Below the pieces are notes generated by a model. It had not been told where the DNA came from. It searched no databases and saw only the letters and a program-made list of their open reading frames with translations. Shown in pieces: positions 1 to 24,127 of a DNA stretch of 32,056 nt. The position numbers and the translations under genes were made by a program. This DNA comes from Syncephalis fuscata S228. Taxonomy: Eukaryota; Fungi; Zoopagomycota. The stretch spans positions 1 through 32,056 of the forward strand of contig JAHLTZ010000082.1 in NCBI GenBank assembly GCA_025786725.1. Direction: 5' to 3'. The stretch's first letter is position 1. Each line of letters starts with the position of its first letter.

Positions 1-630
1 AAGCTCAAAATACACGCCTGGATTCCGATGGCCCATGCCCGTCCGGCGAAACACTAACCTTTACTTATCTTGAAAACGGCCATGTTACTAAGGATAAATT
101 ACCAGACCGGCCAAATCCCAAGACATACACAATCCATTGGTCGTCAGCAGCAAACACCGATAGTATTAAGATGCGTTCTGATCTGTCGGAAAGCAACCAG
201 CTCGGTCCCGTGCATCAGTTTGACGATGGCCAATGCTCCGAGGATGGCTCGATGGGCCGTGCTGCACGCCCATGCCGCGGTAGCTTTACCATTCCAAGTA
301 ATGCAGCACCCGGCCGGCACCAGTTCGTTTGGTGGTGGAAGTTTGATAAGGCAGCGCCCGAGGAATATACCGCCTGTTTTGACGTTATGGTTTCGGGTAG
401 CGATGCACCTTCAAGTCCAGAACCTAGTCCAGAACCTAGTCCAGAGCCACGGCCCAATCCGCCATCATCACCATCTCCACCACCATCAAGCGACAACAAA
501 TGCGCTGGCCAGACCTACGACAAGAATGCATACGTGTGCGACAACGATCAGCTATGCACTATCGACAACCGTGCTTGCGGTAAAGCCTGCTATTCACCAT
601 CCCGTCAAGTGTGTTGACGGCAGTGCGTAG
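1..630 (+). CDS. LPMO-like (His-brace) protein paralog 1 with Pro/Ser linker and C-terminal CBM52-like module; 5'-truncated by window, apparent indels near 26, 44 and 612
   Basis: From 45 the frame reads GETLTFTYLENGHVTKDKLPDRPNPKTYTIHWSS...FDDGQCSEDG...RHQFVWWWKFDKAAPEEYTACFDV, nearly identical to the paralog at 1296-2275. It continues into an (SPEP)3 linker and CAGQTYDKNAYVCDNDQLCTIDNRACGKACYSPSRQVC (CBM52-type Cys pattern). Upstream homology SSKYTPGF-P-MAHAR-P-G needs two +1 C corrections. The stop is at 617, or at 630 (RQVCVDGSA*) if a GT is missing. Confidence 0.8.
414..449 (+). repeat. 3 x 12-bp coding tandem repeat encoding SPEP linker
   Basis: agtccagaacct agtccagaacct agtccagagcca. 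Confidence 0.9.
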
Positions 631-1295
631 TCTCTATTGTATGTGCCATCAGTCAGTTTAATTAATTATTTGCAGGACAAAATAAACTATAAATATAATA
701 ACTTATTCTGTTATAAATGGTTTTACTAGATTTGTATTTTTTTACTTACTATGCAGCTATTGGTATGTTTATAATAACCATCATTACAATTATTTGAATG
801 TGTAAAATGTTAAGTTTGATTATGTAGCAATAATAGACATATATTATATAGCTAATAGCTGCAATATGGTTGTAAATACGTTTCATTTTATCATATTGGC
901 ATATCCATTAACATGAGTTGCTTTGATAATAAATAGGCTGTTATCTAGAAATATTGTAGGCAGACAACTTTCTATGCTCTATTATTAGTTATGTTTATAT
1001 ATATAACTTTTTCAATATCGATATCAATATCGGTTTCTAGTTTCATTTCATTCTTATTACTTTTATATATTATCTAGTTTATTATATTTGATTGTAATAG
1101 TTAATAGTGATATTCTTAGCGTTAATCAATATTATTAACATCAAAACTACGATTAGGATAGCATCATAATAATGTGTTGTTTGGTCATCCAAATTGCAAT
1201 CTCTAAAATCAAAGTTGCAACAGTGCTATGTGAAATAAATAGTTAAAATAGTAAATATTTATTTATAATCCATACGATTCCAATTGTTTGCTTCA

Positions 1296-2275
1296 TTAGC
1301 AGCTATGTATTAGCTGAACAAGCTGATTGTTTGGGCAACATTTATATTGCTTTGGAGAATAACAAGCAGTGCCGCATGCTTTGGTACTCAACGGACACAG
1401 CTGGTTATTGTCGCAAACATAAAGTGAAGGATTATATGGTTGGCCTTTGCAGGAAAGAATACACTTGTATTGCTGGCAATTGGACGGCTAGTTGTAGCTG
1501 GCGAAGAGCTTTTGGCTGACGAGCTATTGCTTAAATCTTTACTATCCAGAGCAACATTACTGCCAACGGTGCTTTCGGGTATTGCCGCGTTCACCGTTGC
1601 CTCAGGATTGCTACCATCAAGGATCATAACATCAAAACAGGCGGTATACTCTTCTGGGCCCGCCTTATCAAATTTCCACCACCAAACAAACTGGTGCCGG
1701 CCAGGTGTAGCACTGCTTGGAATGGTGAAACTGCCGCGACATGGACGTTTAACACGGCCTGGTTGAAGACCGTCCTCGGAACATTGGCCATCATCAAATG
1801 GTAGAGCTGGACCGAGTTGGTTTTGTGCTGTCATATCCGACATCATTTTAATTGTGTCTTGATTTGCTGCTGACGACCAATGGATCGTGTATGTCTTGGG
1901 ATTTGGCTGGTCTGGCAATTTATCCTTTGTGACGTGGCCATTTTCAAGATAAGTCAAGGTTAGTGTTTGGCCGGGACGAGCATTGGCCATTGGAAATGCA
2001 GGCGCGTATTGTGTGCTTGAATCCTGTCGACCAGGGAAACAAGCAGGGACGTTTTGTCGATTGAGTATCCGGTAAGTCATATCGACGTCAATATGATTGG
2101 GGCTCCAGCCACGTTGGTAGCCATTGCACTGATTTGTGCTAATCGAATAATTGGTGCATTCAAGCCAGGAATGCGCGCCAACACTAGGCCATTGCTGGGC
2201 GAGTACAATGAAAGCGGCTAGCGCTATTGTACCAGCATTACGTTTAACACTAATATTATTTAAATAGATATTCAT
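1296..2275 (-). CDS. Secreted LPMO-like (His-brace) protein paralog 2 with Ser/Thr linker and frameshifted C-terminal CBM52-like module
   Basis: ATG at 2275; signal peptide ...ALAAFIVLAQQWPSVGA|HSWLEC with the His1 codon at 2173-2171. Mature H80 lies in YLENGH, and E174-E175-Y176-x-x-C179 follows. After the linker a different frame (1451-1296) reads CKGQPYNPSLYVCDNNQLCPLSTKACGTACYSPKQYKCCPNNQLVQLIHSC*, homologous to the paralog 1 module. One base appears to be missing around 1452-1488. Confidence 0.82.
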
Positions 2276-2743: not shown

Positions 2744-3565
2744 TTAATTAACGTGTTGCTGAGGAGCAATCGTGCCAGCCGCGACTTGATCACGAACTTG
2801 TTCGGGATAGTTGTACTGCGATGCATAGTCGAACCAATCGTTGCCATAGCCAGGATTGAATAGTGGCTTGTTACCAAGCCAGCGCGAAGCCTCGTTGGGT
2901 GGTAGCGCATCTCCTCGTTTCTCACCTGGAGAAAGTACATTGACATCGAAACAGGATGTATACTCTTCTTTGCCGTTAGTTTTGGCAAATTTCCACCACC
3001 ATACGACTTGGTGTCGTCCAGGTGCGGCGTCTTTTGGGATTGTTAGCCGACCCCAACATGGTCGTTTCACGCGACCAGCCGTTGTTCCTAAATCGGCACA
3101 ACCACCATCATCAAACTTAATCTCACGGCCAAGTTGGTTATTCTGGCTAAGATCAGCACGTGTCTTTATCGTATCGATATTTGTCGCAGTCGACCAATGT
3201 ACCGAGTAAGTGCCTGGATTCGGTGTGGGCAGATCAGCTACAGCATGGTTGCGCTCCATGTAGGTAAAAGTGATAGTTTGACCAGGAAATGCTCGTGCCA
3301 TAGGAAAACTGGGATTATCCGCTGCACGTTGCTGGTGGTTAGGAAAGCATGCTGGTGCTTTAGGATCACTTTGGCCTTTAAGACGCCAGGTCATTAGCGC
3401 ATCGCGATGCTGCGCGTCCCAGCCGCGCTGCCAGCCATGGCATTGTCCATTACGAAAATCAGTGCACTCAAGCCAGGAATGCGCCTTGGCTGGGTGGACG
3501 TCCGTAAGTAAAACACCAGCTGCGACTATAATAGCCGCTATAAGGGATGTAAGTTGCAAAATCAT
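2744..3565 (-). CDS. Secreted LPMO-like (His-brace) protein paralog 3, no CBM, aromatic-rich C-terminal extension
   Basis: Intact 273-aa ORF; signal peptide MILQLTSLIAAIIVAAGVLLTDVHPAKA|HSWLEC; H79 in YMERNH; FDDGGC; HQVVWWWKF; EEYTSCFDV. The six catalytic-domain Cys are shared with paralog 2. Confidence 0.85.
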   Translation of the reverse strand: MILQLTSLIAAIIVAAGVLLTDVHPAKAHSWLECTDFRNGQCHGWQRGWDAQHRDALMTWRLKGQSDPKAPACFPNHQQRAADNPSFPMARAFPGQTITFTYMERNHAVADLPTPNPGTYSVHWSTATNIDTIKTRADLSQNNQLGREIKFDDGGCADLGTTAGRVKRPCWGRLTIPKDAAPGRHQVVWWWKFAKTNGKEEYTSCFDVNVLSPGEKRGDALPPNEASRWLGNKPLFNPGYGNDWFDYASQYNYPEQVRDQVAAGTIAPQQHVN

Positions 3566-5463
3566 GGTTAGTTGCTAGTTAGTTTAGGATAATGAAATGA
3601 AAATGAATTTAAGATAATTTGCAGGCTTTATCTGTGAAAACGGGTGCTTTAAATATTTAATCCGCTTTTTTCTAAGGCGCTCTTCTCATACCTATTACCG
3701 CTTGTGCGATATAGTTTTTTCAAATGCACAACGGTTAAATCGTAGTCACTTTTACTTTGCTATCATTTACGTTAAAAGGTATAGTTTACTAAAACAGTGT
3801 TCGAGGTATGGTGTGTTTTAAAACATCTTTTTCCGTTTTTTTTGAAACAGCAGTCTTTTAATCATAATACTGCCTTGAATGGTAGTGATACAAACTGCTT
3901 TACTAGTTAAATAGTAAATGTTGCTTTGTTCTACACTATAAATACTTTAAACATGGCTTATTTGCAATTAAGCTTATTAATATTCGGTTCAGTGTATATA
4001 CGTGATAAAAATGATTTTACAAGTATGCAATTAGTTACGTTTTTATCTGCAGTAGCAGGCAACAAATAAACTTTGAATAATCACTGATTTATACCCATTT
4101 GTTTCAACTTGATACTGGTATTTAAAACTTAACGTCATAACTAAGTCCTATCCATTTTTGCATTGGTGTAACTTTTATCAAAACTGGTAATTTCGATGTG
4201 TGTATCTATCATGAATAGCAAGGATTACAGTAAAATAGACAAATCAAATACTATAAGACCCCATGACGTTTAACAGCTAGGTGCTTGATAGCATTGATAG
4301 AGGTGGTGGGCTGTAAGCTGATACATCATATGTTGGCTTATAGTCGATGGAACGCAATAATGTGTTTATACATATTGTTCATAAAAACATAACATACGAC
4401 AAACGTGTAACATTTTGTACCAACAAAGCCAAAGAACGCAATGTAAGAAGGTAAATATTGTTAAACTTTAGTTTACAGTCAAGTATCAAGTATAAGTAGG
4501 AAAGTGGCTATGTATATTAAATATATGAGCTGATTTATAGGCACAAAGTGATATATTTTATTTTTCATTAGTATTGTTTGCTCTGCATTAACATATTAGA
4601 ATATTGCAATTAGCTGCATTAGATACAGCTACAGTTGTGCTGCCCATTTTAACAATAATACCAGTAGTCTATTAGTCAGTTATTTTATTTATGTATATTA
4701 GTATTATTAAATTAATAAATGTGTGCTGTGTGTATTTTATTTTATATTCAATTTTATGTGCATTGATATTGATTGTTTGCTTGGTGGTCAAATGACTGAC
4801 ATTTAATAACATTTAATTTATTGAACATGATGGCGGGTGGTGAATGGCATCAAAGTTTAAAATACTTATCATGATAGATTATTATCCAGTATGCATATAT
4901 CCACCATTTACTTATATCATTTAACAATATAGTAGACACATTCTTTTCGCTGTAAAGCCAACAGTTTTTATTCATTTCGGTGATACACATATATATACTA
5001 TAATTTTAATACAATTATTCATTTTTCTCTAATTTGCTTTGTTTTACATCAATGTATATTATAATATCTATACTTATTTATTAAGGCTGTTTGTTCTTCT
5101 TTAGTTGCGTTTTCAACAAAGTTTGACTTGTTCGTTTTTTATTCTATTTTCTATGCATATATGAGCCGTTGCTATTTAGCCCATTTTGATTTTTTGTTTT
5201 AGAATCATTTTGCTATCACGTGAATAGGCATTAGCAGCCATCAGGTCTTACTTTAATTGGTAGAGGTATGGAATTCTACCGCCTTGGCCGAACAATAAAC
5301 ACAACGCTTGCGTTTTATTCTTTTTAATCCCTTCCTTGTTCGTTCGTTATTAGATATCCAGACTCCGGTTGGAACAAGGAGTTGGTTCATTTCCAAAGCT
5401 CATTTTCAAACTTTCTTTTCAAACATTGCATTATTAAGAATTACAAGCATTCATTATATTAGC

Positions 5464-6428
5464 ATGTCTTCATTTGCTATTTGGTCAGCGGTCACAACCA
5501 GCTGGCTTACATTTCCAGCTTTAGCAAGTGGCGACAAAAACTCCAATAAGCATGATGGCTGCCAAAGACGCGCTTGCGTAACCGGCCAGACTGCAGCTCT
5601 TAGCAATGTAGGTGATATCGTAAACGAGTTATTGACAAGCGGTCATTAATGTTAGCTATATACTAAAAAAAACAGCGCAACAATCCAACCGACACGATAA
5701 TCCATGCCAGTAGCGCCAAACTCCAGAACTTGAAAGAAGAGGTACCGCTTTGGGATAAATTATGGTCGCCTGCTACGGTAGTGACTATGGAACGCAAGTA
5801 CGCGGTTTGCCCTTGTGTTGGTAGGTATTGTGTTTCGCTTGTGTATAATCCCAAATTAAATATTTGTACAGCGGAGTTTTGGTGCTCCATCACATCGATT
5901 GCTTTTGCTTCACCAATTCTAATTTACCTATTTGTTCCCTATAATTTAATCTCATGGCAAATTCACGTTTGCTGCATATTTGGCATTTTATCCGCATCCG
6001 CCAGCACAATATACCATTGGACTCTTTTTAAGCTGTTTTCTTCGTTGGATGCAGCCATTGCCTGCACAACTATGCATGTATTTATGCTATTGGTGCTTGG
6101 TGAATGCTATCCATACCAGTCTTGGATAAGAAGCTCTAGCTTTTGGATATCAAATGTCGTTTTGGTGCTTGCCTACATCCTGCATCGGTGGGAAAATACG
6201 GCCAAGCCTGCAGTGCAAGTAATATCGTTTTCAGCTACGTTATTTAGCTGGGGCTTGATGCAGTTGGAAGAATGGTATGCTTTGGTGTTTGGCTGGCTAG
6301 GAATCATTTGCTTTCTAGTCGACCGTAAAAACATGGTAGCAGCGCATTCTATCTGGCATATTGGCGGCGGCCTTTCGCTAGGTTTGGCTGCGTGGGCGAT
6401 AATTTACCGTCAAATAGCTGACAATTAA
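5464..6428 (+). CDS. Alkaline ceramidase-like (CREST superfamily) multi-pass membrane hydrolase; exons 5464-5607, 5676-6428
   Basis: AEFWCSITS (cf. AEFWNTISN), SxxxH (STIYH), downstream D (SSLDAA) and HxxWH (HSIWH) Zn-site motifs; multiple hydrophobic helices. Phase-0 GTAGGT...AACAG intron at 5608-5675; exon 1 is less certain. Confidence 0.8.
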
Positions 6429-6434
6429 CAATAC

Positions 6435-6581
6435 AATCACTCTTTTATTAATTCACTACTTTAGAATAATTCCCAATACTTTATAATTATATATATATGA
6501 CCAACTTAATCACTCTTTTATTAATTCACTATTTTAGAATAATTTCCAATACTTTATAATTACATATATGACCAACTTAAT
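6435..6581. repeat. Tandem direct duplication, about 72-bp unit x2, immediately after the ceramidase stop
   Basis: aatcactcttttattaattcacta(c/t)tttagaataatt(c/t)ccaatactttataatta...atatgaccaactt at 6435-6507 and 6508-6578, with a few substitutions and a 2-bp AT indel. Confidence 0.95.
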
Positions 6582-7223
6582 AAATGGCTAAACATTACAT
6601 ATATTATATTGATATTTATGTGCTAATTCATTTGTAAATAATATATTTTAAACAAATGCCTATTATTACTATAGCAAAATTATGCTTTATAATAAATTGC
6701 TTGTTTTTAACAATTTATTGAAATCACTACTTAATTACGTTCACCATTTTAAACATAGCTATAATTCAGCCATTGTTAAACTAGAAGGTTGCATAGTAAT
6801 CTTGTTATTACATGCTTTGTTAGTAAGCAATAGCCAATTGTATGTAACTGTGTTACGTAAAGCAAGTGTGACATTATTCAATGGATTTGCAATTTATCTA
6901 TAGTTTACCAGAGAAATACGGCCTTCCTTTGCGCCATTATAGCAATTCTATTTTGGTAAACAATCTGCTTAATTAAGTAATTTAATATACCGGATTTTTA
7001 ATTTATTTATTTACAGAAAAGACCACCTATATTTATATTTAGTTATTCAATATCCGCTAATTAGGTACTATTCTTGTACCGAGCAAACCACCAAGCTTTT
7101 TTATACAAAAATAGTGTTGCAGAATCCTCAATTGACCTGATACGCTCATTATTTTCCATTCTTCTTCTACTATCTTTTTGATAAATAACACCAGTGACTT
7201 GTCAAAGAAATAGACCACTAACG

Positions 7224-8356
7224 ATGATTAACATATCCAAAAGTGTCTCTGCTCTCGTTGTCGCCGCATTGATTTTAGTTTCAACATGCCAGGCTGCTAC
7301 GATTCCAGCGGCAACTACGACAGATAGAGCAGAAGTGTTAACAAAAGCTCCCAAATCTATTGGATATGACCCAAGTATGCATTTATGTACATTTTACACG
7401 ACCGCATTAACCATATGTTATAAATGTAGCAACAAATACATTTTATGGCTACAAAATAGGCGTCAAGGATGCATTTGGTGATCCAGGACTTCAGTTTATT
7501 GACGATAAATCCTTAACTGCTGGTGCAAAGTCCATTCGTGCTATAAAAGATGATGGTCACAAGTATCTTTTTAGATGCGCAGCACCCAAGGAACTCCAGA
7601 TTAAATCAAGTGATACTGGGATTACTGACCGAAGACTGCAATTTCAAGAGGTATGTTGTCACAGCCCAAGAGCTCATGGCTAAACTAAATTGCATAATAG
7701 CAATGTGCTACCCGCTATTTCGATAAAGGCGATTACACGGCCCAAGAGGCAGCTGGCTGCCCAATGATCCATGCTCTCACAAACGATCCCAGTTGCTATG
7801 GCGACTTGGAACGAGATGCACCGATGAACCTCAGCCAAGCTGTCAACAAATTCAAAACCAATCCTCAAGAATTTGAAGACATATTTGAACAAATCAAGAA
7901 TGGTATGTTTTTATTAAATATATATATACAATTAGTATTAATATCTCTACTACCAGGTATGCAGATTATTGATAGTTTGAAATGGTATTACCATATAACG
8001 GACGAAAGTAAGTTAGCCTCACAACTATATCCCACTGCAATGTTCATTTTCTCGCAGATGTCATAGTTTATAAAGATAAAACCAAGTACAAGGTTCAGTT
8101 TACTCATGTTGAAAGTGCGGTACCTCGATCTGTGCTTCGCAACACGTATAAGTCGCCGGCCTATAATGCATGGATCGAGAAACAAAACAAAGTCACTAGC
8201 GATTTGTATGAGCGGATCTATAAGTTGCTATATCCAAAGGATACGTCACAAGAAACGGAACTCAAGGTTCAAAATGCTCTTAAATCGATTATATTAACAA
8301 ATACTTCAAAAGTATTCGGGAAACTAAACAAATTAGCCAAGGCTGTAAAAGGTTAA
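7224..8356 (+). CDS. Secreted protein (307 aa), probable degenerate protein-kinase-like fold; exons 7224-7374, 7430-7650, 7701-7902, 7957-8007, 8058-8356
   Basis: Signal peptide MINISKSVSALVVAALILVSTCQA. Four canonical GTA...AG introns give one continuous frame of 924 nt. The segment IFEQIKNGMQIIDSLKWYYHITDENVIVYKDKTKYKVQFTHVESA aligns by eye with kinase alphaE/catalytic loop/beta7-beta8. Confidence 0.7.
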
Positions 8357-8762
8357 CGCACCGTGTGCCAATTCTTGACTACAATGGCTTATGGCTTAGC
8401 AAATGTAGCATATTGCACAATCGGTTAATTGGCCAGTTTCCATTTACTTATTTATAGTTTTATATAAATGATCAATTTCTGCTACTGTTTTAAAAGATTT
8501 ATTGAATTGTTTAACGCGAAGAGAAATGAATAATTACAATTGCTAAATATGGTGACGGTGAAAGAATATGAGAGATATGCCAACAGCTAAAATAAAACAT
8601 TCAATAGCAAAAATATAAGTAAACAACACTACTGTTTATTGATAATAAATGAAATGGGTATTTGCGCTAACTATTGCGAATAACTGCGCGTCATCATCGG
8701 TATTCACATATATGTTTAAGTGGGTTCAATAGCCCAAACATTTGATTGTGGTAGAATACTGT

Positions 8763-11700
8763 TTATTCGTCGCTACCATCTTCCTCTTCGTCGCTATCGA
8801 ATATAATATCGACTTGTCCATCAACTGCAGTATCGATTATAAAAAAATCTATCAATTGGACTTCATTAATCGGCCCAAGTCGATGATCTTGAGCAATTGG
8901 TTTAATCACAGTATCGGATGGCACAGGCGGTGTAAGTAGCAATTTGACAACTCTGTAATGAAATACTAGATCAGTGAATGTAATAAAAATGAAACTGCTG
9001 ACTTACTTTTCATTTGAAATAAATCCCTTAAAGTACTTGTTATAAACATGCTTTAAATCGTCCATCTTTACTAAAGCCAAACGATTAACAAAATATTGCT
9101 CCTGCTCTTGTGGACTGGTAAAGCCCTGTAAATTTAGCAATTAGTAAAGCATCAAACAAATATAGACTAGTGCTTACTCTAAACGCATTATTAAGTGCGG
9201 CATTAATCACGCCACCACAGGTTGATCGCTTCGAAAACCATGCATACGCCACAGTAGATCGAGCCGCCTCCAGTGCATGAATATCACATACACTATCCCA
9301 ATGAGTGTCCAGCTTTTCAAGCAGTTGCCAAAAAGCATTTAGTGCTTGGGCCGGATCTTGTGCTCTGGATACGGAATACACCAATTGGCCATGCCATGGG
9401 TGAAGACTAACATCGGCGCCATAAGCATATCCTTTACCGCGTACAGCTTCGTAGATAGGCCCGTCAGCACGAGAAAGCAGCTCACAAAAAACGTTTATAG
9501 CAAAATAGTCAACATGACGTGCGTCTTGCAAATCGTTCACCGGTGCAAGTACATCACAGGGAAGTATGCATGATAAATAGGACGCGGACAATGCTGGTAA
9601 TGAAACAATGAGCAAACCTCCCGGTATAGCTAATTGTACATCGGTATCTACTTGGTAAGGTGAACGTGGCATTGGAAATGGTCCTTGATTATCACTAAAT
9701 GATACGTTGGTTGCTTGTTCCGATGATGGCGCTATTTTGTCCCAACTTGTAAAAAACTTTTGGTAAAGCTCATCATGGCTGGTTTCTGATGGTGTTGCAA
9801 TTTGTAGAAATCCTCCTAGTTCAGACCGACTATCCTTCAAACTGTCGCTATAATGCGTTGTTAGCAAATAAAGTCTAATGCTGTCCAATGCCGTTACAAT
9901 CTCATCGATTCCTTCCGGTGTCTTTAAACGACCAAGTACGCCTTTAAGAAAAGCTCTTTGACGAAACAGACTAATACAAATGTCATTCTGGTTCGTGGTA
10001 ATGCTCTTTTCTCCATATTGATTACCCGGTGCTGCTGATGTTGCTGAATTGGATACTTTTGTCATGGTAGTACGTGCCATAATCGCTTGCATCATATTAG
10101 ATCCTTCTCGTTGCAATTCACTAATGTCGCTTAATAAATTACGCGCAATGGCACCAATACGTTCTGCATCAAATACCACACCAGCTAATGCGCCCAGTAA
10201 CCAGCCCAGCATTTTGTTGTAGTTTTGAGGTGCACAGCTACCAGTTACTACTAAATAATCTGATAGCCATGTTGTGCCAATTAACTGGTTTCCGTAGCCC
10301 ACAGAAGCATCATGTGATACTAAATCGCGTGCCATGCCTGTTGCAACCTCACGATAATCCACAAGCTTGCTATCATCGACGGATACATCGATACCCGACA
10401 TAACATCGTGAATTTTTACCGACGATTCAAACAACAACGACTGGAATAGTAAAAGCCATGGCCGTAAATGATGAGGCAGTACGGCGACTGGGAAGCCAAT
10501 ACTTAAGTGAATAAATAGCGTGCTTGTTGAGACAAGTTGCATAGAGGCAAATGGTCTGGATGTAGCACTCATTTGGCTAATCTGCGCTGTTGACTCCAAT
10601 TGCGGAACGTGAGCCACCAGTGGTGGTGGTGGCATTTTAGCAATCAGTTCTGAAGGTACATTGACTTGGTTTGCTTTGGTGGCGCGCTCTACCGTAGCTG
10701 CCAGTTGGGCTAAGCCTTCATCGCCTAATTGATTTCTTTTTTCTTGTTCTTGTTGTAAAGACGTTTTTTCAAGCGTTTCGGCTAGTTTAGCATCCGGTAT
10801 CATAATTACCTAATTTTGATTTAGATAGATAATAGATACTATTAAACGTGACTTACCTCAACCATTGGTGCATCAATTAGCCAACGTTTTAGTAGTGTCT
10901 TCCAATAAATTTCGTCTTCGTTTGTTAGCTCGTCTATAATATTGAATACATTTGCCTGTGACCCAATCTTTGGAATATCAATGGTATTTTCATGATTTAA
11001 AAACGTTTGGGCCACTACGTCTTGTATCGTCCACTCCATTAATACTTCATGAGGCGAATACTCCATTTCCTCGCACAGCTTCTTTCGATGTCGCTCTATT
11101 GTGTCAGATATCTTTTGCTGACCAGTAAATCCTTCCTTTGCCACCTGACACAGTACTTGTTTGAATGCTTCATAAAACACACCATGTTCCAATAGCTTAG
11201 GTGGTGGCGTGTAGTCCTTTTCATCATTACTATCACTATTCGTTTCTTCACCAATCTCCAATTCGTATGGAATACCACTAAATCCAATAACAAAATAGGG
11301 ACGTGCATAACAATACAAGTGTGACCAAATGAAAGACGCCCATGGGCGTTCTTGCTCGGTGAATCGTTGTCGAAGAGGAGCCGCTGCTATATCTTCTAAG
11401 TAGCGAAACAATATTTGCAATGCCATACAAGTCTTTGCATCCGATAATGAAGGACCATGCCAACCTGAATTGATATTATTAACATTATTATTATTATTAC
11501 TACTATTGCTAAATAAAACATACCATACGCAATGTCTCCAACATCTTCCTCCACAGAAGCAAATTTTACAGCTTGTGACGTAATATCCTTAGTCAGAGTT
11601 TGATATTCTGCACAAAAGACAGGGGGTTGGCTTATAGCTTTCTTTGTACCTTGATTAATCGTGTCGAGTATAATGTCGATTTCGGTTAATATTGAGCTGT

Positions 11701-12471
11701 CTAGATTTGCTCCAGCCAAAATTAATGTAAGCTGACCCGGTTGGTAGTAGCGCTGATGATATTCTTTGATTTGTTCATTGTTCAAACGCATGATGTCCTG
11801 AGTGAGGCCACCGCATTCATAATAATATGTCGAATTGTCAGAATAAAGCTGCTGACGCATGGCTCGATCCATCTGCATTTATGATCAGTTACTGATGTTC
11901 AATAATGTCCATGTGCTTACCAAATCGGCAGATGTATTTTCTCGATCTGCCATTTCACTATAAACGACGCCCTGTCGTTTAGCTTGACCATCCCAGTGAA
12001 ATACCTCTGTGACAAATTGATCATCCCGTAGCGTAGGAGACAGCACGTGTTGCAGATAGACGGGTAGCACGTTCCGCATGCCCTCAACGCCCGCCGTGTC
12101 CAGCGTATACGCGGTATACGCTTCGGTGGTGTAAGCATTGGTACCAGAAGATAACGAGCGACACGCTAATGTATCTAGGTAGCCACGTTGTGGATATTCT
12201 TTAGAACCACAAAATATTACTATTAATATCGCAAAAATGTAAGTTTGTTAGGTTGACTGGTTATGTTTATAAACATACAGTGCTCTAGCGTATGCGGTAG
12301 ACCGCTATCACTTTTGTTGCCGGTCGGGACTACAATAGTAAGATAACATAGTGGACCTGGAACATTCAACAGAACGACGCGTAATTCCGTGCCATTGTGT
12401 TTATATACAGTGGTGGGATAGTTTATAGCTGGGCTATAATATTCCAGTTCTTCAGTAACAGTGAACGTCAT
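8763..12471 (-). CDS. M16 family (insulinase-like) zinc metallopeptidase, multi-exon, resembling the yeast YOL098C/SDD3-type group
   Basis: Inverted Zn motif DSGLPHTLEH|LIFCGSKEYP (intron 12220-12278), GTNAYT, GVVYSEM, YYYECGGL, VRGKGYAYGA; acidic C-terminus DSDEEEDGSDE* ending at 8763. Confidence 0.9.
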
Positions 12472-12589
12472 TTTGAATAAAGCAAGAAAGGGGTATTTTT
12501 CTTCTATTAACGAAATATCGATTAATCTTTTTGCAAACACGTTAATACTGCCATTAACTACACTTTGCATTAAATGGCATTACTATACT

Positions 12590-12780
12590 TAGTAATTATA
12601 AATTATCTATTTTTCCCACACTAAATAACTGTAAATGCGCACTTTTTTAACCATTTTCTAACCATTATTCTCCACTTGCGCGGGAGATAACTATATAACT
12701 GAATAGTTTTTATTCTCAATAAGAAATTTTAAATTCTTTTAACGCATATTGTTAAACATTGATATATGTTTATAATTGTT
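12590..12780 (+). repeat. Diverged dispersed non-coding repeat, copy 1 (copy 2 at about 21238-21420)
   Basis: Collinear shared blocks: taaattatctat.ttt...acactaaataa.tgta ... caataa.aa ... taac..atattgtta.a.att.a.atatgtttata. Confidence 0.7.
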
Positions 12781-14185
12781 GCTCTATTTTGTTGTTGCTT
12801 TCTAATTTACTACAAAGATAAAAACAGATACTATTTAAATTATACGTTTATTCATTGTTGTTACTGTAATTTTGCAATTCTTGCCATCAATTATAGGGTT
12901 AATAACTTATATAGTTATTTTATAGCAATTAGTTATACGATAATAATTTAATTTTTTAGAACTTTTTATAATAATTCAACGTGCTTTTAAACTGAATTTT
13001 ACTTTGCGCCTTTTGTTTTGAATCCCTAAGTAAAATTTGTTTTAATTGAAGTTATGCTGTCATGCACAACATACTTACATTGTTTTTATTAAAATATTGT
13101 TAATAAGTTTATTTAAATAAATAATGTAACATACTATTTGATTTTATTGAAACATTTGAGACCAATTATTATTGTTGTTGTTGACCATGTGTAAAAAGAT
13201 TGATTGAATATTAATAGAAGTCATATGATTGCGATCCCATATCGTTCCGTATTAATTGTTGTTACATCTATCTACAACATGGATTATTGCATCTGAATAA
13301 TCTTTTCTATTTTCTAATATTCTACTATTGCATTTTAGGCATATTTGTGCTGTAAGATCAAGATTAATATAATTATTATAAAAGTCGTTTGTTAAACAGC
13401 CACTTTTTTATAGTCAGTCTGACTAAATAAATGACATTTTGAACAATTAATAGCATAATGACAATATATATATATTAAAGCAATAATAAAGATAGCTAAT
13501 TAACTACATTATTGTATTGATAATTACACATGAATTAATTAATGTTGGATGCAGTAATATACATGTTATAATGATGAATGGGTGTTTAATTGCATTTAAG
13601 TGTTAAGGTGTGAAATAAGTAAATAAAAATATAGGAGTTAAAGTAAAATAGTTTACTAATATTAAATAATATATTAGTAGACTTATGTGATTCAGTGTCA
13701 AAAGATCAAAATTAGCATCCTTTACTTGATTGAACTACACATTTTTTGTTCTACTAAACATGGAACTGGATGGTGAGTTATATTAAATATCAAACTATAA
13801 CACTTTAAATACTTTACAGCAACAATAACGTAAATTAAAATTTATTTATTTATTATATTTTATTATAAGTAACATGAAATACTATTTAATATCTATTTTG
13901 ATATTGAAAATAGTGCAGATTAATTAATATTAATGGATTCAATCGGAGTTGATGTGGCACTGCTTCAACAAACCACTTCAGTAGTAAAAGCTGATTGACG
14001 ATTTATTATTCGAGTTATAGATCCTTTTTGTCCTTCAGTTTAAGGATAAAACTTAAAGTGTAATAGCTCCATATTTATAAATAAAATAATGGCTAAATAT
14101 GATTATTAAAAATGTTGTATAATTTAATGTAAAAGAATAACAAGTACTTTATAGCTATTTAAATGTAATGATCAAGTATATACAC

Positions 14186-14227
<42 letters not shown>
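14186..14227. repeat. (AAT)14 microsatellite
   Basis: Perfect trinucleotide run downstream of the APC2 stop. Confidence 0.95.
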
Positions 14228-14228
<1 letters not shown>

Positions 14229-14325
14229 GACTTGTCGATAATATTAGTTATGATATAGTGCAACCATTTGTATTCAACATAATGGCAACCAACTAATTGC
14301 CAATAACTACTTATGACTAAACTAA

Positions 14326-17300
14326 CTATGATTTTAGTCGGTATTGACCACCGACCCATAGCAGCTTCTCCTCTGTAACCATACTATCTAGCATGTCGCG
14401 TAGTTCACTCGAACTTTTTGTAAACTTGATTGGCCCTTGTAGAAACATCGTCAGCGTAGTATGAATACGCTCCAAAGGCTGTGGACCCATGCTGGAAAGC
14501 ATATTCTTAATAATGTTCCAGTAAAGCTTCGCTTCTTCTTCGGATAGTCCCAAAGCAGCAGCTGCACTGGAAGTCGATGTGCTTGCTGCGCCGTCTCCGC
14601 TCGTTTCGTCAGCCAACATAGCACCTAGCAATGCAAGATAGCACAATAGGGTTGCTATGCGTTAGCTTTGTAATACAATATCTATAAGCAATGCTCTTAC
14701 CTTGCGCGTCTTCATGTTCCTCCAGCGAGGATTGAATCGTAAATCGACCGATACTTTGCTCCTTAAGAATGCCATGGCTACACCAAAAATATAAACGCCG
14801 TCGTAGTTGCGGTGATGGCATTTGTAGTGTATCAGATAACTCGGATATATCCCAAGTATCTATAGCATAAATATAGTTATTAATTAACCTACTAATGAGA
14901 AAAATAAACTTACCGTGATCGTCAAATGCCATAATGACTGTGGCATGAGGTGGTGAAACATGGAATTCAACTTTACGCTCATCAAATTCAAGTTCCAAAT
15001 GAACACTGCCCACTTGTGGTACCCATTCAAGTTTGCGTCGTGGTTTATAACCGGTAAATGCATCGCTAGATGCTGTGCATAGCCTTATTATTATTATTAT
15101 TATTATTAAAAATTAGTTGCTTGTATTGTTGATATAGCTCAAATATACTTACTCATCAATTACATCAGGCAAATTAAATGTTTCTGATTTAAATTCTGGC
15201 CATGAAAGACGCGAAAGAACAATTGGCCGTAGTAAAGTTGATTCCTATGGCAAATAAAAACAATTATACAATCTTCCATCAATATAACCTTTTCCAAATC
15301 ATTATTACTTACATCATCATTTGGAATAATTTGATCTTGGTGTAAGTATTGTTCAAATCGTTTACTATCGGCAAAATCCTTAATCATCACTTCGCAGGAC
15401 TGCAAATTCGTTTCACCAAAACGTAGTTTTAACATCTCCAAATTACGGATCTAATTATAGTCAATCAATAGTCCATTTACATCTTGATACCATTCAATTT
15501 TAATACTCTACCTCTTTTTCCGTATCATAGTCGTCAATAGCCAAAAGACGCTCGGCAAACATCGCTTGGAATGCTTTTACAAATACATCACGCGTCTTGT
15601 ATATACTAATCAACATACTGATAGCATCGGCATTACGGCGATGAAGTGTATCCAATCCTGTTGCAATGTTTAAAAGATCATGTCGGATGGTTAGTATTAA
15701 GTAGCACTTTGCTATACCGTTATACTCACGAGGTCCAGCATCAATGGGGATCGGTTCCCAATCAGCATCATCGCCATCTTCATCTTCTGAATCGGATGTA
15801 TAGCCACCTTGCATAGCATCACCAGCCGTTAATTCCTCGATCAGATCTGACCTTGACTCGTTCATTAAATCCTCAGCAATACATCGAATGGTATCGTCTC
15901 GCTGACTATAGTAAATGAATTGGCATTTGTTTTATAATTACTAATAGTCTTACCGAAGATAATTACGCACTGGATCAGCCACTCGTTCTAACAAAGTACC
16001 GGGTGGATCAATAAAGCGAAGACATCGAATCATTGACACATAATGCATAAGAATGTCCGAAGTATCTGCGCCAGGGTGTAAAAGACGCTTTTCAAGTCTA
16101 ATTTTGTCTCGCTGTTTAACTATTGAATTCATAATAGCTAAATATACTTACGAAATTGACAAAGCTGCCACTAATTGATCTCGTTGACGTGGTGTTTTTA
16201 AACAAATCTATTTAAATTAAATATATCAATTGTCAAAGTGTTTAATCACTTTCTCAACTACCTTTAAATCTTCTAATGCACCTTTACAAGCTGGATATTC
16301 AACAATAATATTAAATAGCTCAGAAATCCTTAATGATTTGTTAATGATAGATTATTATTATCATTAGCATTACTATCATTATTATCATTATTACATATTT
16401 AAACCTACCGAATGTTTGCCAAACTACGCGAAAGATGAATGGCCAATGTATCGCGCCAAGTAAAAAATGAACTATTTTCACGCATTCCTATTCAAATACA
16501 TTAACAGCTATATCCGCTATGACTATTTACTTACCATAGTAAAATAAATAGTAAATCCAAGGCAATAGCACATGATCTAGCCAATAATTGCACTGAGAAT
16601 AGACCGATGTATCAAAAGAGCCACGCGTCATTGAATAGACCAAATACTCCATAGCTTGGGTTGATACTTTAATAACAATTTGACGCAGCCATTGGCCATC
16701 TACCACGGTCAACTGTTCACGTATTTGACGCATCTCTTTCAGTGCTTCTATTTGTTGAGATCGTTCTTCAGAGTGTGTACGATAAATAGAAGCATCATGA
16801 GATACTGATTGCAACTCATTAGAGATTTTATCTAATGCAGATATTAACTCTGTAGGTTGGGTAACTTTTGGTAATGGTAAATGATCTATGTCACGCTGTA
16901 TATCTTCAAATGTTTGTAACAGATTACGCGAGTAATAAAATGCCATGGGCCATAGACTACTTGGTAAAAGTGTTTTAATAACTCCCCGTACTCTACTCAT
17001 AAATTGGTCATGCTGTGACGATCTATACATTGTCAGTCATTATCATTAGCAGTTGGTAGTTATCATATTCATTTATATAGTTACTCTAGAAATAACGATG
17101 CTCGCCTGTCAATTCGATTAACCGCTGCCAAAATCAATCGATTCAGATGAAGAAACGTTTCGGATATCCATGAAAGTAGTTCTGGCTGTTCCCATAGCTC
17201 ATTACCCTCCGTATCTATGGTAATACGCTCCTAGTTGATGCTATTTAGACTAAATTCTATATAAGCAGTATATCCTACCCAATATTGTTGATCAGCTAAA

Positions 17301-17720
17301 GCAATTTCTTGAGACAAACTACTGACAAGTTGTTGCTGCGCCACCTCTAGTCAATTGGTTATCAATTTATTAATAGCTGTATAATGGTACTTGTTAATAG
17401 ATACTTGCCTGTTAAATAGTCAAGAAACTGTGTCCAAAGATTAAGCTGCCGTATACTAGTACGTAGCGAGTTCGCTTGAGCCTTTGCTAGCACTACAAAC
17501 ATACGAACATCAGTAAAAGTATTCGATAATCAATACAGCCAGAATCCACCTTCGTTCGATTGAAGAAGACGCGGTATATTCTCCCATAGCTTAATAGTAT
17601 TCATTAGCTGTCGTCAATATTTATTAGATTACTTACTTGAGAGATCTCTATAATGCTACTCTCCTCTAAAGTGGCCGAACTAGGCTGTTTTTGTCTAGAA
17701 TTATGTGTTCTATTCGTCAT
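14326..17720 (-). CDS. APC2: Anaphase-promoting complex subunit 2 (cullin-like), multi-exon
   Basis: RLLHPGADTSDILMHYVSMIRCLRFIDPPG, YLRQRDDTIRCI, WEPIPIDAGP, LKLRFGETNLQSCEVMIKD, RKLEWVPQVGSVHLELEF and C-terminal winged helix YWNIIKNMLSSMGPQPLERIHTTLTMF. Likely ATG at 17720. Confidence 0.95.
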
Positions 17721-17883
17721 ATTCAAAAAGTGCAATACGCGCAATAAAACAATGACGACAACAGAATTGGGCAGACGTGCCTTTTACTTTTGCATTCCTT
17801 AAGATTCCATACTTTTGTTACTTCTTTATTAACTACTTTTTATTGGCCATAACAATTACGACTTTCTTGGAAATAAGAGCAAT
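17721..17883. promoter_or_regulatory. Putative bidirectional promoter between APC2 and securin-like gene
   Basis: 163 bp between divergent ATGs; contains ACGCGC (CGCG core) near 17737 and pyrimidine-rich tracts. Confidence 0.55.
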
Positions 17884-19211
17884 ATGCATCGACGACAAAA
17901 ACCGCAGGAAGGCGTCTTGATTGACCAGGAGAATGCAGGCATGCTAGGCCGAACACCGGGCGTGTCTCGTGGTATTCTATCAGCCAAAATGGATTCCAAT
18001 TCACTGGCATTTAAAACACCAAATCCTCGCCTGGGTACGTTGCTTTGTATAACCTAACTATGCGGTGCTTGATACCGTATACTAACGATGTAGCGGTGTA
18101 GCTGACACCAAGGCAATGAATACAGCAATGGCAGCACCAATCAATAAACGGCGTCTACTAGGTGATATTACCAATGCAACACCTTATGTTCAAACAGTCG
18201 AGAAATCAAGCCATTTACCATCGGCACGGTCTCAAGTAAATATGCGTAGGCAAAGTGGACAGTATTTACCAAATACCAGATCTACAACAACACCCACTGC
18301 AACATCCACCATGTCTACTGTAACAATTGTAGATACGACAATTGACGAGAACATTGAGTACATGCCACCACGATCATCAGGTGATTAAATATAATTACTT
18401 TACTTTGATATTTATAGTTGCTATTTAATTAATTAGAATTACCATTCAAAGCGGAACTACCTCTTAATTGGCATCGGTTGATTGGTCCTGATAATCCACA
18501 AAGCTGCCATTTCCGCCGTGATAACAATAGTAGTAGTATGCCACTTAATGATTGGTCATTGAGTCGAGTGCCAGAAACATTACGGACACCATTTAGACCA
18601 AAAGATAGTAAGTAATTCAATGGATTAAAACATACACTATAACTTTACAATCAATAGAAGGTTTATTCTACCAAAATAACCGGCATTTGCTAGTTGATAT
18701 TGAGCCTCCAGTGATTAACGATGATGAATTGAGCCTTTCAAATTTGCTACATCCGATTGAATTTCCTATTCCTGACTCATACACAAAACGTCTTCTGCCG
18801 AGTACAGTCTACGCTGCTAACGATAGACGCAGTTCTTTTGGAAAGCCTCAAATTAACAATCAGCAGGCTGGTCGTAGTCGTGGGCATGGCTCTAGCTATT
18901 CAAATCAATCTGGCTATAGTCGTATAGCGTTTTCAGCAAGCAAACGATCCTCTCGGACTCAGCGTTTTCCCTCTCGCTTACCTGTGCTGTCTAAACTAAA
19001 GGCTCGCCACGATGTACAACCATCATTGTTGTATGATCATAAGCCTCATACTGGCTATCGTAGCACTACAACAACCGTAACATCATCCAATTATGATAAT
19101 CTAGACCACAGTAGTCGTTCGAGAATACCTCGATATCATAACCTGGCTGCCTCTGCATTGAATGCAATGCATTCGAAGGATACAACATCTAGCAAACGTT
19201 ATCAGCGATGA
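17884..19211 (+). CDS. Probable securin (Pds1/Cut2-like separase inhibitor); exons 17884-18034, 18102-18380, 18437-18607, 18658-19211 (384 aa)
   Basis: Low-complexity protein with N-terminal DQEN (KEN-like), FKTP, D-box RRLLGDITN (RxxLxxxxN), then DENIEYMPPRSSELPF, matching the fungal securin (D/E)IEYMPP...ELP separase-binding segment. Splice phases are consistent. Confidence 0.75.
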
Positions 19212-19357
19212 AATAGTAAATAGTTGCTTTCTGATTATAAATAATAAATATAGAGCATTGCTTTAAAATATATTGATTCAGCATTGTAAATAAGAAAACA
19301 AGAAATAGTTAAATAACACTCTTTATTATTTATCGCTAATAATAAATAAAAAAATAA

Positions 19358-20053
19358 CTAGAGATTGAATAGCATTGCACTAACTGCAACAAAGGCCGTC
19401 GAACCAATTATGGCTGAATTGGAGATATAGTAGGTGGGACTTGTAGATGATGATGAATATTTTTTGTCAGCTTCATCGCACATTTCCAGCGTGTTTTTAG
19501 CTTTTGCTGCTAATTCACTGGCAATATCATTGGCAAACGAGTTTGCTCTAATAGGCTTCCAAGTAAGCCTTGGTTCGAAGAGAGAACGTTCACAGGTTTG
19601 GCATGTCTTTATGTTGGAGTCATTATACGTCTTGTGGTTACAATACGTGCCATCGATTTCTTTTTTACAACCATAGTCTCTTATCAGTGGATAGACCAGC
19701 CAATCCGCATAAAAGTTCCAGATTTTTGTCTGTTTCTTCTCCAGCTCGCTTTTGCACGAGCTTTCGAGCGCATCAAGTGCTTTATTAACTTGAGTATCCG
19801 CACAACGATGACCAGGTGCGCCGTCACTTGGCGCCTCACATACGGATTTACTGGCGGCAGGCGTTGTGGCATTTAGTAGAGCTTTAAAACACTCTGGCTT
19901 TAAATCGGTGCTGCTCAGTGCTTTTTGACAGTTTTCTGAAATAGTCGAGGACTTGGATTTGGCAGGCACGGTACTATTGGTATTTGAAGCCTGCCCCATG
20001 GCTGCGCCTACAATAGCCAGGATCGGAATAAGTGTTTTCAATGAAAGAAACAT
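19358..20053 (-). CDS. Secreted, probably GPI-anchored Cys-rich protein of unknown function (231 aa)
   Basis: N-terminal signal peptide, 10 Cys, Ser-rich stretch then hydrophobic C-terminus (SNSAIIGSTAFVAVSAMLFNL); intronless ORF. Confidence 0.85.
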   Translation of the reverse strand: MFLSLKTLIPILAIVGAAMGQASNTNSTVPAKSKSSTISENCQKALSSTDLKPECFKALLNATTPAASKSVCEAPSDGAPGHRCADTQVNKALDALESSCKSELEKKQTKIWNFYADWLVYPLIRDYGCKKEIDGTYCNHKTYNDSNIKTCQTCERSLFEPRLTWKPIRANSFANDIASELAAKAKNTLEMCDEADKKYSSSSTSPTYYISNSAIIGSTAFVAVSAMLFNL

Positions 20054-21420: not shown

Positions 21421-21631
21421 TATCGACAACTCGATGTACTTTTATACTCCATTTATAAATAGGATACTAGTAATATCAATCTTTAATGGATTGATGCAGT
21501 CGTGTAACCGCCGTGTCTTAAACAGGTCAAAGATGTTCATGGCCATGCAGCGCCCTTTTCTTTCTACTTGTACCCACTATTGTTCCTCTTGTCTATTGCT
21601 TACCAATTCTAACATTTATTTCTAGCTAGTC

Positions 21632-23703: not shown

Positions 23704-24127
23704 ATAAAGCTTTATTTGCAAACATTGATACATTTAAACTAAACCTTCGATCTATTGAACATGATGATAAGTGATAAGTAGCATCAATCATCAAAATACT
23801 CATCATCATAGATTTACTATCTAGTATGTATATATCCAGTATATATATAGTACTTTTAAGCATAATTATGTTAATTTGGATTGTGTACTTGATATTATGT
23901 TGTTTGATTTCTATCTATCCTGGGTATATAGCCATAATTTATAACACTAAAGAAACATTAGAATTAATCAATAGTAAAATAAATCTAATAAAAATCAATT
24001 CACCTCTTTTTTAAAATACTTGCTGCTTTGTTGTTCTTTTAACAAATACGTTGGTAGAATATCGCCTGTTACTTTATATATACTAAGAACAGCCACAGTC
24101 ATCCTATAGCATAGTACCTATTAAAGT

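What the first reader, a model, noticed from the sequence alone, without database searches (positions are those of the whole stretch)
501..630. LPMO-like domain fused to a CBM52-like module points to beta-1,3-glucan as target
Seen: after a Pro/Ser linker, paralog 1 ends in C-x-G-x-x-Y-D-x-x-x-Y-V-C-x4-LC-x6-CG-x-ACY-x-P-x4-C. Known: this is the CBM52 pattern, characterised in S. pombe Eng1 endo-beta-1,3-glucanase as binding beta-1,3-glucan. Inference: catalytic domain-linker-CBM architecture independently supports a polysaccharide-active enzyme. It suggests fungal wall beta-1,3-glucan (host or self) as the target, a substrate for which I know no dedicated LPMO family.
Basis: partly seen in the sequence, partly recalled or inferred. 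Interest (0 to 1): 0.85.

Follow-up and report, generated by a model that had tools for sequence, protein, structure and literature searches.

The report
CBM52 module on LPMO-like protein
A fungus that parasitises other fungi carries secreted copper-enzyme-like proteins (LPMO fold, family DUF7492) that end in a genuine beta-1,3-glucan-binding module (CBM52). This points to an untested oxidative enzyme working at fungal cell walls, but it does not show which sugar polymer is cut.

Summary
Window 501-614 encodes a six-cysteine module after a Pro/Ser linker. It passes Pfam's CBM52 model (PF10645) and aligns to each of the three experimentally characterised CBM52 repeats of S. pombe Eng1 at 40-50% identity.

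The genome is Syncephalis fuscata, a mycoparasite (Zoopagales). The window is the badly polished start of a haplotig. The clean copy on contig C46 shows that the module runs about seven residues further than the window reads.

The upstream domain is Pfam DUF7492. It has an LPMO fold, an invariant N-terminal His, a second His and an axial Tyr. Its Glu-x-Tyr and W-x-W motifs align with chitin-active AA11.

In this genome CBM52 occurs only on two of the three DUF7492 genes. The fusion is also present in S. plumigaleata and Thamnocephalis, and in diverged form in Neoconidiobolus.

So "LPMO-like domain + CBM52" is real and undescribed in the searchable literature. "Beta-1,3-glucan is the catalytic substrate" remains an inference, for five reasons:
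- The active site looks AA11-like.
- There is one repeat, against three in Eng1.
- Host hyphal walls hold little beta-glucan.
- The parasite encodes the enzymes for making its own beta-1,3-glucan.
- This particular copy (paralog 1) is cut by the contig start and frameshifted in both contigs.

The scan had already noted this locus on the same DNA.

The parts
36..392 (+). C-terminal two-thirds of the DUF7492 (LPMO-like) domain of paralog 1. The N-terminus lies beyond the contig start. The second brace His is codon 81-83 and the axial Tyr is codon 366-368, in the E-E-Y motif.
   Evidence: The PF24320 match covers 42-407 and the family profile A3 covers 36-503. Codons were read. Frame breaks lie at ~20-28 (shared with C46) and at 45 (window only).
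393..500 (+). Pro/Ser-rich linker.
   Evidence: Translation. The equivalent linker of paralog 2 is modelled as disordered, pLDDT under 50.
501..614 (+). CBM52 module of paralog 1: one repeat with six Cys. In the window's reading a stop follows at 615-617. The reading supported by C46 and by orthologs continues to about 636.
   Evidence: PF10645: 26.8 bits and 28.1 bits with one stop read through. The C46 copy scores 40.3-42.9 bits over profile positions 1-49. BLASTP to the Eng1 repeats: E 5e-13 to 2e-9 for the C46 copy and 6e-11 to 5e-7 for the window copy. AF2 model of the module: pLDDT 93.
1326..1451 (-). CBM52 module of paralog 2, with two extra Cys. In the window it is out of frame with its catalytic domain because of a missing base at ~1462.
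   Evidence: PF10645 38.8 bits. C46 has one intact ORF, identical to NCBI BDF19DRAFT_440943. The indel was located.
1592..2179 (-). DUF7492 (LPMO-like) domain of paralog 2. His follows directly after a signal-peptide-like stretch.
   Evidence: PF24320 53.5 bits. AF2 model pLDDT 85, with 197 of 292 residues at 90 or more. The Foldseek top 50 are all LPMOs.
2921..3487 (-). DUF7492 domain of paralog 3. It has no CBM52 and carries an aromatic-rich tail instead.
   Evidence: PF24320 38 bits. Alignment, tree.

Best explanation
The stretch encodes the C-terminal targeting module of a secreted two-domain protein of the mycoparasite Syncephalis fuscata. The N-terminal domain (Pfam DUF7492) is a histidine-brace, LPMO-fold copper domain and a distant sister of chitin-active AA11. 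A disordered Pro/Ser linker joins it to a single CBM52 repeat, a small disulfide-locked stack of four beta-hairpins homologous to the beta-1,3-glucan-binding repeats of S. pombe Eng1.

Most likely the CBM52 holds the copper domain on beta-1,3-glucan-containing fungal wall material, either the parasite's own wall or glucan-rich host structures. There the domain oxidises a wall polysaccharide next to it. Given the AA11-like active site, chitin or the chitin-glucan complex is at least as likely a substrate as the glucan itself.

Shown: the domain identities, the fold, the conserved metal-site residues, the restriction of CBM52 to these genes, and conservation of the fusion. Inferred: copper binding, glucan binding by a single repeat, catalysis and the substrate. 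Paralog 1, the copy in the finding, may be a pseudogene or misassembled. Paralog 2 is the intact exemplar.
For: - CBM52 identity.
- P0131 is Eng1 itself. A full-library phmmer search with paralog 2 hits Eng1 at E 5.9e-10.
- CBM52 binds beta-1,3-glucan in Eng1 (PMC7388972; PMC3627985) and in M. oryzae GBP, which sits on the fungus's own wall.
- LPMO fold: AF2 model pLDDT 85, and the Foldseek top 50 are all AA10, AA9, AA11, AA16, AA15 or AA14.
- H1, W3, H80 and W166 are invariant and Y176 nearly so in 98 family members, with His directly after the signal peptide.
- The family profile hits AA11 structures 4mah, 9exj and 7p3u at E 2e-8 to 1e-6. It aligns E-x-Y and W-x-W with AA11's Glu, axial Tyr and core Trp residues.
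- In the genome CBM52 is found only on DUF7492 paralogs 1 and 2, and there are only three DUF7492 genes.
- The fusion is conserved in S. plumigaleata and Thamnocephalis and recognisable in Neoconidiobolus.
- The Zoopagales proteins form one clade, SH-aLRT 100.
- The genome encodes GT48 and GH72.
Against: - There are no biochemical data for any DUF7492 protein; no paper holds DUF7492 or PF24320.
- The module is a single repeat, while the characterised Eng1 CBM has three.
- I could not read the model's coordinates, so the brace geometry rests on sequence conservation and on the alignment to AA11.
- Only the C-terminal third aligns to AA11 by sequence.
- A histidine brace does not guarantee polysaccharide oxidation, as X325 shows (PMC13353379).
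- Paralog 1 is frameshifted in both contigs and has no protein model at NCBI.
Confidence: 0.45

Rival explanations
1. One reading: DUF7492+CBM52 is a dedicated beta-1,3-glucan-cleaving LPMO, and the CBM matches the catalytic substrate.
For: - The CBM52 is genuine and its characterised relatives bind beta-1,3-glucan.
- CBM52 otherwise accompanies GH81 and GH16 glucanases.
- The genome already has 30 or more separate HGY-start AA11-like LPMO matches, presumably chitin-active, and none of them carries CBM52. A different substrate for the DUF7492 trio is therefore plausible.
- Beta-1,3-glucan is absent from the LPMO substrates named in a 2026 paper.
- Resting Rhizopus spores are rich in beta-1,3-glucan (PMC13192858).
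Against: - The second-sphere Glu-Tyr pair and the W-x-W core match chitin-active AA11.
- CBMs often target a neighbouring polymer rather than the substrate.
- Mucorales hyphal walls have minimal beta-glucan (PMC11437000).
- Other DUF7492 members carry CBM1, CBM96, GPI-like tails or nothing, so the family has no fixed glucan link.
- Triple-helical or amorphous beta-1,3-glucan is not an obvious crystalline LPMO substrate (my own knowledge).
Confidence: 0.2
2. It is a non-catalytic copper-binding or wall-remodelling protein, analogous to X325/Bim1. It is kept on the parasite's own wall by CBM52 in place of the GPI anchor used by many relatives.
For: - 19 of 98 family members end in a Ser/Thr-rich tail plus a hydrophobic C-terminus, which looks GPI-like.
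- X325 shows that a histidine brace can exist without polysaccharide oxidation.
- M. oryzae GBP, a CBM52 protein, resides on the fungus's own wall.
- S. fuscata encodes GT48 and GH72, so it probably makes its own beta-1,3-glucan.
- The fusion also occurs in Neoconidiobolus, which is not a mycoparasite.
Against: - The full AA11-type second sphere (Glu, Tyr, Trp-x-Trp) is conserved.
- A few relatives carry true substrate-targeting CBMs, CBM1 and CBM96.
- A third Asp ligand, as in X325, could not be tested.
Confidence: 0.2
3. The copy in the finding (paralog 1 of S. fuscata) is a dead gene, and its CBM52 is a relic. This concerns this copy only. It is compatible with any of the functional readings for paralog 2 and the orthologs.
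For: - A 1-nt frame break in the catalytic domain is shared by C353 and by the interior of the 621-kb contig C46.
- No NCBI protein model exists, although paralog 2 and the S. plumigaleata ortholog are annotated.
Against: - The break lies in a short C run in an assembly with many 1-nt indels.
- Apart from the break both pieces are open, and together with the upstream ORF they retain the signal peptide, all brace residues and all six Cys.
Confidence: 0.4

Closest known systems
[quoted passage not shown]
   Same: The six-Cys pattern, the conserved Tyr residues and the terminal Y-x-C-x-D-G-x-L motif are shared. Identity is 40-52% to each Eng1 repeat. The module is above Pfam's cut-off.
   Different: There is one repeat instead of three. 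The central loop is 3-4 residues shorter. The module is attached to an LPMO-like domain rather than to GH81. Binding is untested.
AA11 lytic polysaccharide monooxygenases (AoAA11 4mah, AfAA11B 9exj, AfAA11A 7p3u), which are chitin-active
   Same: Both have an LPMO beta-sandwich, an N-terminal His, a second His, an axial Tyr with Glu two residues before it, and a W-x-W core. The profile E-value is 2e-8.
   Different: Only the C-terminal ~60-75 residues align by sequence. The N-terminus is H-S/T-W, not the HGY start seen in the genome's own AA11-like genes. Pfam treats it as a separate family (DUF7492). The genome's AA11-like genes form a distinct set. It carries CBM52, not X278.
X325 LPMO-like copper proteins (LbX325, Bim1)
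   Same: Both are fungal LPMO-fold proteins with a histidine brace. Many DUF7492 relatives have GPI-like tails like X325.
   Different: The Syncephalis proteins carry a CBM instead of a GPI signal. An AA11-type Glu-Tyr pair is present. X325's extra Asp ligand was not examined.
M. oryzae GBP (MGG_05232), a secreted CBM52 protein
   Same: Both are secreted fungal proteins with CBM52. GBP binds beta-1,3-glucan and the fungus's own wall.
   Different: The paper names no other domain in GBP besides its signal peptide and CBM52. Here the CBM52 is the tail of an LPMO-like domain.

Membership tests
CBM52 (PF10645) | Match to the family profile above the curated cut-off (25 bits) | tested here: met
   Window copy 26.8-28.1 bits. 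C46 copy 40.3-42.9 bits over positions 1-49. Paralog 2 scores 36.3-38.8 bits.
CBM52 (PF10645) | Homology to the experimentally characterised repeats of S. pombe Eng1, with all six Cys and the conserved Tyr aligned | tested here: met
   BLASTP E 5e-13, 4e-11 and 2e-9 at 40-52% identity. Alignment A4 has five invariant Cys columns; the sixth Cys column is filled in nearly all rows. P0131 was confirmed to be Eng1.
CBM52 (PF10645) | Tandem three-repeat organisation, as in the characterised Eng1 CBM | tested here: not met
   Paralogs 1 and 2 have a single repeat. Eng1 has three.
CBM52 (PF10645) | Binding to beta-1,3-glucan | not testable with these tools
   Needs pull-down or ITC with curdlan, pachyman, laminarin, chitin and wall preparations.
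LPMO (copper histidine-brace monooxygenases, in general) | Signal peptide cleaved so that His becomes residue 1 | tested here: met
   H-S/T-W follows a hydrophobic leader in paralogs 1 (C46), 2 and 3 and in about 97 relatives. H1 is invariant in 98 sequences. Cleavage itself is inferred.
LPMO (copper histidine-brace monooxygenases, in general) | A second brace His and an axial Tyr/Phe | tested here: met
   H80 is invariant and Y176 is at least 90% conserved. Y176 aligns with the Tyr at position 140 of the AoAA11 chain, by my count on the alignment. It corresponds to the axial Tyr that PMC12186267 describes for AA11 (Y141 in AfAA11B).
LPMO (copper histidine-brace monooxygenases, in general) | Immunoglobulin-like beta-sandwich LPMO fold | tested here: met
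   AF2 pLDDT 85. The Foldseek top 50 are all LPMOs, with probabilities mostly 0.96-1.00 (0.85 at rank 50), best E 5.8e-5 and TM-score on the target about 0.5.
LPMO (copper histidine-brace monooxygenases, in general) | Copper binding and oxidative cleavage of a polysaccharide | not testable with these tools
   No characterised DUF7492 member was found in the literature.
AA11 | Sequence similarity over the whole catalytic domain | tested here: not met
   The family profile aligns only positions 128-201 to residues 89-165 of 4mah. Pfam files it as the separate family PF24320. The genome's HGY-start AA11-like genes hit the DUF7492 profile only weakly (E 8e-9 or weaker, C-terminal part only). Two of them examined match AfAA11A and LPMO_10.
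AA11 | Tyr-Glu second-sphere pair, stated to be unique to AA11 in PMC12186267 | tested here: met
   The E-E-Y motif aligns with AA11's E-M-Y. E174 and E175 are at least 90% conserved.
X325 | C-terminal GPI anchor signal and no CBM | tested here: not met
   Paralogs 1 and 2 end in CBM52 with no hydrophobic tail. However, 19 of 98 relatives have GPI-like ends.
X325 | An additional Asp ligand to copper | not tested
   This needs the model coordinates or a solved structure.

The most novel reading that the evidence does not exclude
DUF7492 is an uncharacterised LPMO family. Its Zoopagomycota members, tethered by CBM52, oxidatively cleave fungal beta-1,3-glucan. This would be the first LPMO activity on that polymer, used by obligate mycoparasites at the host interface or on host spores.
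Probability: 0.15. Interest if true: 0.85.

Novelty: new variant of a known kind. Interest (0 to 1): 0.55.

Why it matters
LPMOs are known for cellulose, hemicellulose, chitin, starch and pectin, but none is known for beta-1,3-glucan, the main structural polymer of most fungal walls. Here a widespread LPMO-fold family with no characterised member (365 clusters at 50% identity) carries a beta-1,3-glucan-binding module in one lineage. That gives a concrete and cheap experiment: express paralog 2, then assay binding and oxidation on glucans, chitin and walls.

Either outcome is informative. One would be a new LPMO specificity relevant to antifungal and mycoparasite biology. The other would be an example of a chitin-type or non-catalytic copper protein parked on glucan.

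The work also gives DUF7492 a structural and evolutionary assignment, as a distant sister of AA11. In addition it yields a predicted fold for CBM52, whose nearest solved structure is only a weak granulin match (Z 3.6).

Tried and rejected
- An intron as the explanation for paralog 2's frame change: rejected, because C46 has one uninterrupted ORF identical to the NCBI protein.
- DUF7492 as AA11 proper, or as the "AA11" counted in mycoparasites by Ahrendt 2018: not supported. Only the C-terminal third aligns, and a separate expanded HGY-start AA11-like set exists. Whether CAZy counts DUF7492 under AA11 could not be checked.
- AA18: this family number is cited to Santos et al. 2025. The same review that mentions AA18 describes the metagenomic cellulose oxidase CelOCE separately. 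Equating the two is my own inference. Neither source gives a sign that AA18 covers DUF7492, and I could not check this in CAZy.
- Solved structures for CBM52: Foldseek found nothing. VIA-align gave only a weak granulin match, Z 3.6.
- Gene neighbourhood: ten large ORFs in the window gave no Pfam hit above the curated cut-off, and none to a CAZyme family.
- Literature: no paper holds DUF7492 or PF24320. The original Eng1 CBM paper (PMID 18466295) is not held, so its content is cited second-hand.
- dN/dS test of paralog 1 against its S. plumigaleata ortholog: not attempted. At 70% protein identity synonymous sites are probably saturated, and the test could not exclude a recent break.

Full report
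**What is in the window.** Window 171-617 (+) is an open frame. Pfam places residues 110-148 of that ORF in PF10645 (Carb_bind) at 26.8 bits, against a curated cut-off of 25, E 6e-6. The preceding part falls in PF24320 (DUF7492). A paper equates PF10645 with CBM52 (bioRxiv 10.1101/2025.07.03.663104).

**Where it comes from, and the quality of the sequence.** The window is G000:C353:1-32056, so the contig start cuts paralog 1. A 99%-identical, collinear copy lies inside the 621-kb contig C46.

Paralog 2 on C46 is 100% identical to NCBI [quoted passage not shown]. That species belongs to Zoopagales, family Piptocephalidaceae, a family of parasites of other fungi (PMC6899921).

Over the first 4 kb, C353 differs from C46 by 17 substitutions and 43 gap openings. 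Nearly all are single bases missing from the window, and they are concentrated in positions 600-1150. This is the signature of a poorly polished contig end. Three consequences follow:
- The window's last four residues and its stop at 615-617 result from deletions at 604-624. C46 reads on through Y-K-C-V-D-G-Q-L. That reading matches the S. plumigaleata ortholog and all three Eng1 repeats.
- The frame change in paralog 2 at ~1462 is absent from C46.
- A 1-nt frame break at about window 20-28 is shared by both contigs, and NCBI has no protein for S. fuscata paralog 1. I searched the two pieces of paralog 1 separately and joined nothing.

**Is it really CBM52?** Yes.
- The C46 copy of the module scores 40.3-42.9 bits over the whole 49-position profile.
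- A search of 1.84 billion representative proteins with paralog 2 found P0131 at E 5.9e-10 through the module alone. P0131 is S. pombe Eng1 itself, NP_593162.
- Pairwise, the paralog 1 module aligns to each of Eng1's three repeats at 52, 49 and 40% identity (E 5e-13, 4e-11, 2e-9), with every Cys in register. The window's own truncated version still gives 6e-11.
- Eng1's C-terminus is reported as a CBM of three ~50-residue repeats. It has affinity for beta-1,3-glucan chains and is needed for activity on insoluble substrate and for septum targeting (PMC3627985; PMC7388972).
- Among my hits, CBM52 also sits on GH81 (Eng1) and on a GH16 protein whose cluster includes a Piromyces finnis sequence.

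An AF2 model of the module is confident (pLDDT 93) and consists of four beta-hairpins. Foldseek found no solved relative. The only whole-module structural neighbour is zebrafish granulin at Z 3.6, which is weak. One difference from Eng1 is that the module is a single repeat with a shorter central loop.

**What is the upstream domain?** DUF7492 is a moderately large family: 365 clusters at 50% identity with E at most 0.001. Named members come from Ascomycota (Taphrina, Savitreella), Mortierellomycota, Chytridiomycota and Zoopagomycota.
- In 98 members with an intact N-terminus, H1, W3, H80 and W166 are invariant and Y176 nearly so. The His follows a signal-peptide-like leader.
- The AF2 model of mature paralog 2 has pLDDT 85, with 197 of 292 residues at 90 or more. 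All 50 best Foldseek matches are LPMOs (AA10, AA9, AA11, AA16, AA15, AA14). TM-scores are only about 0.5, so it is the same fold but a distinct family.
- By sequence the family profile reaches the AA11 structures 4mah, 9exj and 7p3u (E 1.8e-8 to 1e-6). It aligns the family's W-x-W and E-E-Y with AA11's W-T-W and E-M-Y.
- PMC12186267 states that AA11s have an axial Tyr combined with a Glu two residues earlier, a pairing unique among LPMOs, and core Trp residues at those positions.

DUF7492 is therefore best described as a distant sister of AA11, not as AA11 itself. Only the C-terminal third aligns. The same genome also holds 30 or more matches to a different, HGY-start AA11-like LPMO set. Two members I examined hit AfAA11A and Pfam LPMO_10. 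This agrees with the AA11 expansions reported for mycoparasites (PMC6784888).

**Distribution of the fusion.** In S. fuscata, CBM52 is found only on DUF7492 paralogs 1 and 2, each seen on both contigs. DUF7492 is found only in this three-gene cluster.
- The same architecture is annotated in S. plumigaleata (two genes) and Thamnocephalis sphaerospora. A degenerate version occurs in a second Thamnocephalis gene.
- A diverged but significantly similar tail occurs in Neoconidiobolus thromboides (E 2e-8, all eight Cys aligned).
- CAZy-based counts in Ahrendt 2018 list exactly one CBM52 in T. sphaerospora.
- On a tree of catalytic domains the Zoopagales proteins form one clade (SH-aLRT 100). The tail-swapped paralog-3 type is nested among the CBM52 bearers, so the fusion looks ancestral there.

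Elsewhere the family is different. Of 98 members, 4 carry a Pfam-significant CBM52 (all four are Zoopagales proteins), 2 carry CBM96 and 1 carries CBM1. A further 19 have a Ser/Thr-rich tail ending in a hydrophobic, GPI-like C-terminus, and 27 have almost no tail.

**Interpretation.** The architecture of signal peptide, histidine-brace domain, disordered linker and CBM is that of a secreted enzyme active on carbohydrate, and the CBM very probably recognises beta-1,3-glucan.

The second inference, that beta-1,3-glucan is the catalytic target, is not established and faces counter-evidence:
- The AA11-type active site suggests chitin.
- A CBM may merely place an enzyme next to its substrate.
- The usual hosts of Syncephalis, from my own knowledge, are Mucorales. 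Their hyphal walls are dominated by chitin and chitosan with minimal beta-glucan (PMC11437000), although resting Rhizopus spores are rich in beta-1,3-glucan (PMC13192858).
- The parasite encodes its own GT48 glucan synthase and GH72 transglycosylase. CBM52 could therefore simply retain the protein on its own wall, as with M. oryzae GBP, and replace the GPI-like anchor of relatives.
- Histidine-brace proteins without polysaccharide activity exist, such as X325.

The LPMO substrates named in a 2026 paper do not include beta-1,3-glucan, and my literature searches found no LPMO reported to act on it.

**Verdict.** The combination of an LPMO-like family with CBM52 is real, conserved in Zoopagomycota and undescribed in the literature I could search. 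Its substrate and its catalytic competence are open. The specific copy at 501-630 is truncated, locally mis-assembled and possibly dead. Paralog 2 on C46 is the protein to test.

Noticed in passing
window 1-1150 (also ~1462): The start of contig C353 lacks more than 40 single bases relative to the 99%-identical contig C46 (17 mismatches against 43 gap openings in 4 kb). This looks like a poorly polished contig end, so frameshifts seen here should not be read as biology.
   Followed up: yes
window ~20-28; C46 ~240075: A 1-nt frame break inside the LPMO-like domain of paralog 1 is shared by both contigs, and NCBI has no protein model for this gene. It is either a pseudogene or a residual assembly error.
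   Followed up: partly
G000 contigs C309, C304, C328, C214 and others (loci L016-L020): The genome has 30 or more matches to a separate set of LPMO genes that start with HGY. The two examined hit AfAA11A and Pfam LPMO_10, and one (L019) has its own C-terminal Cys-rich module. This appears to be an expansion of chitin-type LPMOs in this mycoparasite.
   Followed up: partly
window 21500-23900: This stretch matches 50 or more places on many contigs at 66-73% identity. Its two ORFs (21632-22402 and 22471-23703) have no Pfam hit. It is probably a repeated element or an expanded lineage-specific gene family.
   Followed up: no
window 4003-20000 versus C46: The C46 copy of this region is about 7 kb longer than C353, and the alignment breaks after window 4003. 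The two contigs therefore differ structurally and are not just redundant assemblies of one sequence.
   Followed up: no
window 2744-2935 (-), paralog 3: The paralog-3 type, with an aromatic-rich tail instead of CBM52, is conserved in Syncephalis and Thamnocephalis. It nests among the CBM52-bearing lineages on the tree, which suggests that the tail was replaced after duplication.
   Followed up: partly
P0002 and P0003 (S. plumigaleata): The catalytic domains of the two S. plumigaleata CBM52-bearing paralogs are almost identical (branch lengths 0.01 and 0), while their linkers and CBM52 tails differ. This suggests gene conversion or a very recent duplication of the domain.
   Followed up: no
model m15144d45f093 (C46 copy of window 489-636): CBM52 is predicted with high confidence as a stack of four beta-hairpins. 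Foldseek finds no solved relative, and the nearest fold is granulin (Z 3.6).
   Followed up: yes
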